Below are positions 16,919-19,900 of a stretch of 64,000 nucleotides of DNA, one piece after another. This DNA comes from Vicugna vicugna (Eukaryota). Under the pieces are notes generated by a model that was given only the letters and a program-made list of their open reading frames with translations, did no database searches and had not been told where the DNA came from. Each line of letters begins with the position of its first letter. Position 1 is the stretch's first letter. The translations under genes were made by a program, and so were the position numbers. The DNA lies in the NCBI GenBank assembly GCA_013265495.1, contig MU060887.1, positions 124,001 to 188,000 of the forward strand, read 5' to 3'.

Positions 16919-19900
16919 CTACATCTGGTCCCCAAGGAGAACCCCCACACTTAGGTTTCCTTCAACAATTTTAATCAAACGGGGGGGGGGGAGGTAAATT
17001 GGGAACAGAAGATGGGGGAGGCGGGGGCGGGTCCGGGGGCTTTCACTGAAGTAGGACTTGATCCTCCCGAGTCCCTCCTGATCCCCTGTCTGCGAGTCCT
17101 CCCTGTGGGAGAGAGGTGGCGACACTGACCATTTCTGGGGATCAGCCCTCCCAGCCAGGGCTGAGCCCTGGCCTCTCACCCTCCTTCCTCACAGCACCTC
17201 CAGGACACCTACCATGTAACGTCTTCTGCCTCTGTCTCCAGGATGCTCTGGGCTGTGCGCCAACTGAACCGGACAAACTGGGGGAAGCCGAACACAGGGT
17301 CCACGTGCTTCCTCAACCATGCTTTTGTCTTGGGATCTGAGGGAAGGGTACGGTGAACAATGTGATAGCCCTGAGCCCTGCCATAATGATGCAGCTTCTC
17401 AGCCTGGCACCTGTGGCCTGCCACCTCATCTCAGGCCTCCTCTGGAGTCCCTGAGGCACTACCCACTGTCTGAAACACCTTCCTACCTCAGGACCTTTGC
17501 ACAGGCAGTTCCCCCTGACTCTCTAACCAATAGTTGCTCAAGGTACAGTTTAGGAAGACTACCTCTGAGACACCTCCTTTACTTCTCCAAGGACAACAGG
17601 CCTTAAGCCAGCATTTGTGGATCATGAGGGACTAGGGTAATACCCATTTCTCCCTGGTAACCACGAACACAGTGGGGACAGGGAGGTCCTTGTTTGTCTT
17701 GCTTATGGACAAATTCCCAGGGCTCAGCTCTGTAGGGCACATACCAGGTGCTGTTAGCACTGAACACTGCCCAATCTCTTTGGCCTGGACCAGGTTTCCT
17801 CACTTTGGCCTCACATACATTCCAACTACAGACTGGCTGGGCTGTGCCACCCAAGTGCCAGAGGGATCCTTAAATCCAGCCACTGAATCTTTGCATCTGC
17901 CCTTGTGTATCCTTGTAGGGGTGGGATGCCACGATCACTTCCACTTCACAGACAAGGAGATTGAGCCCCATAATGAAGAGAAACAATGGACTTAAGCTGG
18001 GGCCACTGGATGTGAAGCAGTATCCCCTCCCTGCTCCTTTCCCCTTAACAAATGGCCAGATACCTATGGTGGGGCTCGGTCCTTCACTGGGGCTCCAGAG
18101 ACAGCAGAGGGAGGGAGGGAGAAGGGAAGACGGAGCCTGCCAGCTGGAATCCAGCTCTGCCACATGTTGGCTAAAAGTAGCCTCCAGCCACCACCACCCT
18201 GCCCCTTCTGGACCTCAGCCTCTCCTGCTACAGAACAGGGTGAGCAGAATAACTTAGAAAAGCTCAGAAGCACACCAGGCCTGCCTTTCTTAGTGTTACT
18301 GTCTCTATGTTATTGTCACTGCTGTCTGCTCACCATTGGGGTAGCCTGAGCCATAATCAGCGTCCAGGTCCTGCAGTTTTTCCACAAACTGCCAGTTCTT
18401 CACAGCCTGGTCACGGGCCACCTGCAGGCAAGACAGGCACTTGAGATCTCCCTCCCCATGAAACCACCACACCTGCCTCCTGCCCAGGGGGATGCTGGGA
18501 GCTGACCATGACCAGTGGGGGCCTAACCTTGGCACAGATACTGGCAGCGCTGACCACAGGGAAGAGGGCGTCTGCTTTGGCCTTGACTGTCACCTCAATG
18601 CCAGGAAAGCGCTGCTGAAGCCACTCCTGATATGTCTCTGGAGGCCCGACAGTGTCCACAAACACCTGCCACAGCGACAGAAATGTATTCATTGAACAAC
18701 ATCTGGAAAAACAACTGTGCAGGTGATCCAGTTTCAAGGCCTTTGCACTTGCTGTTCCCGCTGCGTGGAATACTCTTCTCTCAGCTGGTGCCCAGACTGT
18801 TATCTTTCTCCTGGGGTCTCAGCTCAAACATCACATCCCAAAGAGGCTTTTCCTGATCACACTATATCCATTCGACATTTATTGAAAACCTACTGCATGC
18901 CATAGTCTGCTCTAGGTGCTGGGGACACAGCAGCGAACATGCCAGACAAAAACCCCTAGCCTCATGGAGTGGACACTCTGGTGAGGGCCACAAACAAGAA
19001 ACAGGATAAATAATAAAGCATAAGGGAGATCTTGAAGGGGTTACCATTTTTTAAATTTTGGGCCTGTTCAGGGAAGGTCACTGTGAACTGGTGCCATGCG
19101 AATAAAGATCTGAAAGAGATAAAGGAATGAGCTATGGAAAGATCTGGGAAAGAGTATTCTAGGCAGCGGGAACAGCTAGTGCAAAGGCCTTGAGGTGGGA
19201 CCATATCAAATATGCTGAACAGGGGTACAGAGACCACATGGCTGGAACAGAGATGAGGTCAGAAAGGTAACAGGAAAAGTGATCTCCATAGCTGTTATTA
19301 TTCTCAAAAATCATCTTTGTTATTTGTTTCCCAGCTGCTCGTCTCCCCTAACTTGGTCATGAACCCCTGAGGGCAGGGTCCTTGTCTGCTTCAGTTACTA
19401 CATCGTCAGCTCCACATTCCAGTCCTGGACCTCAGCCACCTCCTCAGCAAGGCCTCCCTTTATACATTCTCTATCTCAAGTGCATGCATCCTTGGTATTC
19501 TTTCAAGACATTCTGTTCTTTGCCTCAGAGCACTTGATGCAATGCCAACTTACATTTCTCTCTGATGATTTAATCTCATTCCCCACTTGCCTGTGAATTT
19601 TCCTGATTTAACTTTCACTTTGATCAGAAAATTAAATGCCGAGATTTACATTTTAAAAAGACAACTGTCTGCTTCGTGGGGAACACACTGTAGGGGAGAG
19701 GGCTGGAGGAGGATGGGGCAGGCATCCAGGAGGGGAGGGTGCCGTGGGTTAGGACAGAGACTGTGGGCAGGTGAACAGATGGGGGATTTGTTCTGGACAC
19801 TGAGCCTTTAAGACATGGAGACAGATGAGATGGAGGTGAGGCTGGGGGCTCCACTATGGTCCTCAGTGTGGCACACATTTAAGATAAGAAAAACAGTAGG

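What the first reader, a model, noticed from the sequence alone, without database searches (positions are those of the whole stretch)
16919..17102. RNASEH2A last exon lacks the conserved C-terminal 14 residues and its stop codon
Seen: the last exon reads ...[16 protein letters not shown] (His285, codon 17014-17012). It then runs into 30 unrelated residues ([30 protein letters not shown]), crossing an 11-C homopolymer and an ATTAAA (16975-16970). Recalled: in human and mouse His285 is followed by RY(F)xERGLExAxSL*, a tail that packs against RNASEH2B/C, is needed for an active trimer and holds the Aicardi-Goutieres residue R291; ATTAAAATTG lies in the human 3' UTR. Inference: about 48 nt covering the tail and stop are deleted. 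If the ATTAAA is the polyA signal, the TAG at 16921-16919 lies beyond the likely cleavage site, giving a non-stop mRNA; one fewer C would give an early TGA. This is either a lineage-specific remodelling of an essential genome-integrity enzyme or an assembly collapse.
Basis: partly seen in the sequence, partly recalled or inferred. Interest (0 to 1): 0.72.

Follow-up and report, generated by a model that had tools for sequence, protein, structure and literature searches.

The report
RNASEH2A tail missing, probably assembly error
In this artiodactyl (probably South American camelid) assembly, the otherwise intact RNASEH2A gene lacks the last 14 codons and the stop codon; this is most likely a local assembly error, but I could not inspect reads to prove it.

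Summary
Exon 8 of RNASEH2A (minus strand, starting at 17102) reads normally up to His285 (17014-17012). It then runs through 30 unrelated codons, an 11-C run (16991-16981) and an ATTAAA (16975-16970) to a TAG at 16921-16919.

Pig, cattle, sheep, a second ruminant and beluga all keep the tail (RYFQERGLESAT.L) and its stop. In those species His and ATTAAA lie 99-103 nt apart; here they lie 36 nt apart. All 208 vertebrate RNASEH2A proteins fetched that reach exon 8 carry the tail. The literature shows it is needed to bind RNASEH2B/C and for activity.

The rest of the gene is healthy:
- eight exons with GT-AG introns;
- dN/dS of 0.12-0.17;
- catalytic motifs kept;
- a single copy in the genome.

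RNASEH2C in the same genome keeps the helix that contacts this tail.

The one read-level hint is that 14 DNA runs from 5 studies all lack the same share of sampled words (5 of 77). That number fits the junction plus the C-run, but the positions of the missing words were not shown.

My estimates: about 0.70 assembly artefact, 0.13 rare real allele, 0.12 real lineage-wide change. Interest is low unless reads confirm it.

The parts
20743..20869 (-). RNASEH2A exon 1 (ATG at 20869-20867)
   Evidence: tblastn with cattle P0164 and splice contexts; contains the DEAGRG catalytic motif
20457..20528 (-). RNASEH2A exon 2
   Evidence: AG/GT borders
20204..20330 (-). RNASEH2A exon 3
20022..20109 (-). RNASEH2A exon 4
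18528..18665 (-). RNASEH2A exon 5 (PF01351 match over the cut-off)
18334..18421 (-). RNASEH2A exon 6
17213..17336 (-). RNASEH2A exon 7 (DPKTKAW...DVTW)
   Evidence: 98% identical to a ruminant exon-7 ORF, P0002
17012..17102 (-). Orthologous part of exon 8, ending in His285 (CAT at 17014-17012)
   Evidence: aligned with pig, cattle, a second ruminant and beluga
17011..17012 (-). Junction where orthologues hold 14 further codons, the stop and the start of the 3'UTR (net 63-67 nt)
   Evidence: alignments A1-A3; spacing count
16976..17011 (-). Sequence homologous to the orthologous 3'UTR, here read as codons; includes the C11 run at 16981-16991
   Evidence: unique in the assembly
16970..16975 (-). 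Conserved ATTAAA, the likely poly(A) signal
   Evidence: GATTAAA is present in all outgroups, 44-58 nt after their stop; marmot RNA contigs end 10-11 nt behind it
16919..16921 (-). First in-frame stop (TAG) of the assembled frame, 49 nt beyond ATTAAA

Best explanation
The gene is an ordinary, working RNASEH2A. The loss of its last 14 codons and stop is a local fault of this assembly: a stretch of roughly 50-65 nt was dropped between a very C-rich piece of exon 8 and the C-rich start of the 3'UTR. Short-read coverage and contig ends tend to fail in such places, and gap closing can then join the two ends on a few shared Cs. On this reading the animal's real gene carries the normal RYFQERGLE-type tail and stop, followed about 55 nt later by ATTAAA. 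What is shown: the sequence is absent from the assembly, and the tail is universal and functionally required. What is inferred: the absence is technical.
For: 1. The tail is universal. All 208 fetched vertebrate RNASEH2A proteins that reach exon 8 have it. In pig, cattle, sheep, a second ruminant and beluga the coding DNA from CAT to GCCAC is identical even at silent sites.
2. The tail is required. Residues 284-299 bind RNASEH2B/C, and a form lacking the C terminus is inactive (PMC3060506).
3. The rest of the gene shows no decay. There are eight exons, all GT-AG. dN/dS is 0.12-0.17 against cattle and sheep over codons 1-285. The catalytic motifs are kept.
4. It is the only copy in the assembly.
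5. RNASEH2C in the same genome keeps the kinked helix that contacts this tail, identical to human residues 128-156.
6. The spot is error-prone. Pig and cattle RNA contigs break in the same C-rich 3'UTR tract, and the cattle reference and cattle RNA disagree on its C-run.
7. All 14 DNA runs (5 studies, 2 organism labels) hold the same 0.94 of 77 sampled words. Five missing words correspond to about 50 word starts. That equals the set of words spanning the junction plus the whole C11 run. This fits, but it is not proof.
8. Unchecked notes of this scan report other apparent coding deletions in this assembly, and one frameshift contradicted by reads.
Against: No read, contig or second assembly of this species or any camelid was seen, so nothing shows the tail directly. 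The positions of the five missing words are unknown; one or two reference-private SNPs would give a similar share. The junction has only short C-rich similarity (CCCCC) on both sides, which is equally typical of a genuine slippage deletion. I did not establish the assembly method.
Confidence: 0.7

Rival explanations
1. The deletion is a real but rare allele. The reference animal carries, probably in one copy, a slippage deletion that removes the RNASEH2A tail, and the assembler kept that haplotype. A carrier of one copy would be healthy, because RNase H2 disease alleles are recessive.
For: Short C-rich similarity at both edges fits replication slippage. The rest of the gene is intact and under selection, as expected for a young allele. 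All 14 other DNA runs lack the same small share of words, which would also fit a reference-only allele.
Against: A heterozygous loss-of-function deletion of this size, in this gene, in the one animal sequenced, is much rarer a priori than a local assembly fault. No read evidence exists either way.
Confidence: 0.13
2. The deletion is real and fixed in this lineage (South American camelids, or camelids as a whole). RNase H2 then works with a remodelled A-subunit end. That end could be a short Pro-rich tail closed by a stop in or just before ATTAAA if the C-run is 10 or 12 long. Alternatively a 30-residue extension would be read from transcripts that run past ATTAAA.
For: The sequence as assembled. 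14 runs hold 94% of the words of the region, so most of it is certainly right. Ruminant transcripts do read past ATTAAA. Tail replacements can be tolerated in other genes, as an unchecked note on MSX3 suggests.
Against: The new tail lacks Y287, R291, L293 and A296 and is proline-rich. The tail is kept in 208 of 208 vertebrate sequences. The partner helix of RNASEH2C is unchanged, so there is no sign of co-adaptation. With C11 and cleavage after ATTAAA the mRNA would have no stop. I know from mouse knock-outs that RNase H2 is essential in mammals; I did not check this here.
Confidence: 0.12
3. RNASEH2A is a dying gene in this lineage and the tail loss is its first lesion.
For: Only the lesion itself.
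Against: There is no other lesion in eight exons, dN/dS is 0.12-0.17, and it is a single copy with no replacement elsewhere in the assembly. RNASEH2C is intact.
Confidence: 0.03

Closest known systems
Mammalian RNASEH2A (human 3P56 chain A, mouse 3KIO/3P5J chain A; cattle NP_001033623-type, 299 aa)
   Same: The eight-exon structure is the same. The protein is 90% identical to cattle over 288 residues and 95% identical to pig over 255. The RNase HII domain (PF01351) and catalytic motifs are present, and the exon-8 linker EDS...SYF...PH is present.
   Different: The assembled gene lacks residues 286-299 (RYFQERGLESAT.L) and the stop. It reads 30 codons of 3'UTR instead.
RNASEH2A-deltaC and R291H of Reijns et al. 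2011 (PMC3060506)
   Same: Both involve loss or damage of the C-terminal segment that bridges RNASEH2B and RNASEH2C.
   Different: Those are engineered or patient variants shown to lose complex formation or activity. Here the loss is seen only in an assembly and has not been tested.
Predicted 254-265-residue RNASEH2A isoforms without exon 8 (for example pig isoform X4, P0222, and cluster members from bats, primates, horse and mustelids)
   Same: These are tail-less RNASEH2A products annotated in many mammals.
   Different: They arise from alternative 3' ends alongside the canonical 299-residue form. In this window the canonical form itself cannot be made from the assembled DNA.

Membership tests
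Eukaryotic RNase H2 catalytic subunit (RNASEH2A) | RNase HII catalytic domain (Pfam PF01351) with the acidic catalytic residues | tested here: met
   PF01351 matches over the cut-off at exon 5. The DEAGRG, FVDTVG and KADA..PVVSAAS motifs align with cattle, sheep and marmot.
Eukaryotic RNase H2 catalytic subunit (RNASEH2A) | First part of the eukaryote-specific C-terminal extension (human 250-257 strand and the 258-283 linker) | tested here: met
   Exons 7 and 8 align to human 3P56_A up to residue 285.
Eukaryotic RNASEH2A | Extreme C-terminal tail (human 284-299) with Y287, F288, R291, L293 and A296, which binds RNASEH2B/C | tested here: not met
   The tail is absent from the assembled sequence in all frames and anywhere in the assembly. 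Whether it is absent from the animal was not testable.
Eukaryotic RNase H2 heterotrimer | Partner subunit RNASEH2C with its C-terminal kinked helix | tested here: met
   PF08615 matches at 100 bits in the own genome. The C-terminal exon is identical to human residues 128-156.
Eukaryotic RNase H2 heterotrimer | Partner subunit RNASEH2B present and intact | not tested
   Not searched.
Assembly artefact | Reads of the same animal disagree with the assembled junction | not testable with these tools
The only hint is the constant 0.94 word share in 14 runs.

The most novel reading that the evidence does not exclude
The deletion is real and fixed in South American camelids. An essential genome-integrity enzyme would then have lost the 14-residue tail that every other vertebrate examined uses to clamp the catalytic subunit onto RNASEH2B/C. 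It would work with a proline-rich replacement, or through a transcript whose stop lies beyond the usual poly(A) signal.
Probability: 0.1. Interest if true: 0.8.

Novelty: not a real feature. Interest (0 to 1): 0.2.

Why it matters
If real, this would be a natural experiment on how RNase H2 assembles. Biochemistry and Aicardi-Goutieres genetics both say the tail is needed, so a healthy lineage without it would imply an unknown way of holding the trimer together, or tolerance of a severe hypomorph. If it is an artefact, which I think most likely, it matters only as a warning: this assembly can drop tens of bases in C-rich coding sequence, and gene-loss or tail-remodelling calls made from it need read support.

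Tried and rejected
2. I looked for any camelid copy, without success:
   - The exon-8 ORF search found only a pig ORF.
   - Full-length and C-terminal fragment searches gave no camelid.
   - Three cluster listings named no camelid.
   - An exact look-up of an ATG-started plus-strand ORF over the C-run found nothing on record.
   - Two metagenome scans and one genome-collection scan with window-specific words gave 0 hits.
   - The tools say that records of this genome or a very near one may be left out, so these blanks mean nothing about the species.
3. I tested for a tail encoded elsewhere (a downstream exon, another contig or a second gene copy) and rejected it.
4. I tested whether the post-junction sequence was filled in from another locus. 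It is unique in the assembly.
5. The RNA runs X15-X17 hold about 0.3 of the words of 16600-17400 but were not listed for 16880-17340. I infer that their words lie downstream of the gene, in repeat-like sequence. They say nothing about exon 8.
6. The word shares of the small organism-A runs (0.25) are lower than either hypothesis predicts. Contigs of other species also break in this C-rich tract, so these shares are uninformative.
7. A literature search for RNASEH2A in camelids found nothing relevant.
8. I did not run complex prediction. No references for the spliced RNASEH2B and RNASEH2C of this genome were available, and a negative result would carry no weight.

Full report
**What is in the window**

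RNASEH2A lies on the minus strand. I mapped eight exons with a cattle protein and the splice contexts:
- exon 1, 20869-20743
- exon 2, 20528-20457
- exon 3, 20330-20204
- exon 4, 20109-20022
- exon 5, 18665-18528
- exon 6, 18421-18334
- exon 7, 17336-17213
- exon 8, from 17102

All introns are GT-AG, and the joined frame is open for 315 codons.

Exon 8 reads [30 protein letters not shown], with His at 17014-17012. It then continues with 30 unrelated residues to a TAG at 16921-16919. On the way it crosses a run of 11 C (16991-16981) and an ATTAAA (16975-16970). With 10 C the frame stops at a TGA just after the run; with 12 C it stops at the TAA inside ATTAAA.

**Comparison with known structures and with relatives**

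phmmer against PDB chains aligns the exon to human RNASEH2A 255-285 (of 299) and mouse 257-287 (of 301). Both continue with RYF where the window has LLF.

The protein databases held genomic ORFs and RNA contigs from relatives, which I traced to their DNA:
- a pig exon-8 ORF (P0151, contigs L003-L008);
- a ruminant contig (L009);
- cattle genomic and RNA loci (L016, L019, L020);
- beluga (L021);
- sheep RNA (L034, L035);
- marmot RNA (L024, L025).

In all of them the His codon is followed by 14 codons (RYFQERGLESAT.L in the artiodactyls, a close variant in marmot) and a TAG. The five artiodactyl species are identical from CAT to GCCAC even at silent sites. His and ATTAAA lie 99-103 nt apart in pig, cattle, sheep, the second ruminant and beluga, against 36 nt in the window. 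The window is therefore 63-67 nt shorter.

The aligner places this as one gap. A 48-nt gap plus a shorter C-rich 3'UTR tract fits about as well. Either way, codons 286-299 and the stop are gone, and what follows His is orthologous 3'UTR. Among the 396 proteins fetched, all 208 that hold the exon-8 linker carry a tail of the form [YF]F.ER.L. The window is the only exception.

**What the tail does**

Reijns et al. (PMC3060506) show that residues 284-299 form a small alpha/beta motif bridging RNASEH2B and RNASEH2C. A 283-299 peptide binds the B/C pair with a Kd of 123 nM. Y287, F288, R291, L293 and A296 are essential for that binding. A C-terminally truncated subunit gives no active enzyme, and R291H is a disease mutation that lowers kcat. 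The replacement tail in the window is proline-rich and keeps only a Phe at the position of F288.

**State of the rest of the system**

The gene shows no other lesion. Over codons 1-285, dN/dS is 0.17 against cattle and 0.12 against sheep; cattle against marmot gives 0.21. The catalytic motifs are kept. It is the only RNase HII-type locus in the 2.03-Gb assembly, and exon 8 is single-copy.

The tail-coding sequence is found nowhere else in the assembly, even allowing three mismatches, and a pig C-terminal protein finds only this locus. The sequence just after the junction is unique.

RNASEH2C is present. Its last coding block is identical to human residues 128-156, which covers the kinked helix that touches the A tail. 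The partner surface has therefore not drifted.

**The poly(A) question**

GATTAAA is conserved in every outgroup, 54-58 nt after the stop in the artiodactyls and 44 nt in marmot. Two marmot RNA contigs from different runs end 10-11 nt behind it, as expected for a cleavage site. Cattle and sheep RNA contigs run 291-422 nt further. If the assembled sequence were real, most transcripts would probably end before the TAG at 16921. Some read-through transcripts would include it. A C-run one base shorter or longer would give a stop before cleavage.

**Real or artefact**

No camelid protein or contig could be reached by any database tool.

What remains is indirect. Fourteen DNA runs from five studies, under two organism labels, each hold 0.94 of the 77 sampled words of 16600-17400. 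Most of the region is thus confirmed in many animals, but the same small share is missing everywhere. Five words at one in ten correspond to about 50 word starts. That equals the number of 31-letter words that span either the junction 17012|17011 or the whole C11 run. It is what one would see if both were wrong in the assembly. One or two reference-private SNPs could give a similar figure, and the tool does not say which words are missing.

RNA-type runs hold too little of exon 8 to help. Pig and cattle RNA contigs also break in this C-rich tract.

Other notes of this scan, which I did not check, call this genome a South American camelid. They list several other apparent coding deletions, plus one frameshift contradicted by reads and one tail change that was real. 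The genome size (2.03 Gb) and the closeness to pig, ruminants and whales agree with an artiodactyl of that kind. Short-read SOAPdenovo assemblies exist for llama, guanaco and vicuna (PMC7331169). I did not establish which assembly this one is.

**Weighing**

A fixed loss of a segment that is invariant in 208 of 208 vertebrates, required in vitro, and whose partner surface is unchanged would be extraordinary. A dropped stretch in a C-rich spot of a draft assembly is common. I put about 0.70 on an assembly fault, 0.13 on a real allele of the reference animal, 0.12 on a real lineage-wide change and 0.03 on gene decay. The finding deserves a quick read check, not a high score.

Noticed in passing
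window 22000-24000, minus strand: Upstream of RNASEH2A lies a thrombospondin type-1 repeat exon ([23 protein letters not shown]). It matches the N-terminal parts of proteins annotated as THSD8, or as THSD8-RNASEH2A read-through isoforms, in bats, bears and dogs (P0008, P0009, P0227, P0344).
   Followed up: partly
window 29470-29601: This is the only N-run of the window (132 letters).
   Followed up: no
window about 16400-16700: Repeat-like sequence lies downstream of the gene. By recollection it resembles a Tigger/MER2-type element; I did not test this. The read filter tripped at 16405-16443. RNA runs X15-X17 seem to hold words only in 16600-16880, not in the exons.
   Followed up: no
L016:5290-5580 against L020:1330-1560 (cattle): The cattle reference assembly and cattle RNA contigs disagree in the C-run of the RNASEH2A 3'UTR: a run of 10 C against CCCCCCTC. 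This tract is unstable or error-prone in other species too.
   Followed up: partly
protein clusters of P0222, P0163 and P0154: Many mammals have predicted RNASEH2A isoforms of 254-265 residues that end after exon 7 and so lack the B/C-binding tail. Pig isoform X4 ends ...DVTWLAEQLEVLRT. Their function, if any, is unknown.
   Followed up: no
L022, L023 (pig RNA) and L019 (cattle RNA): Logan RNA contigs of RNASEH2A end 37-47 nt after the stop, inside the C-rich 3'UTR tract. Contig ends there do not mark transcript ends.
   Followed up: partly
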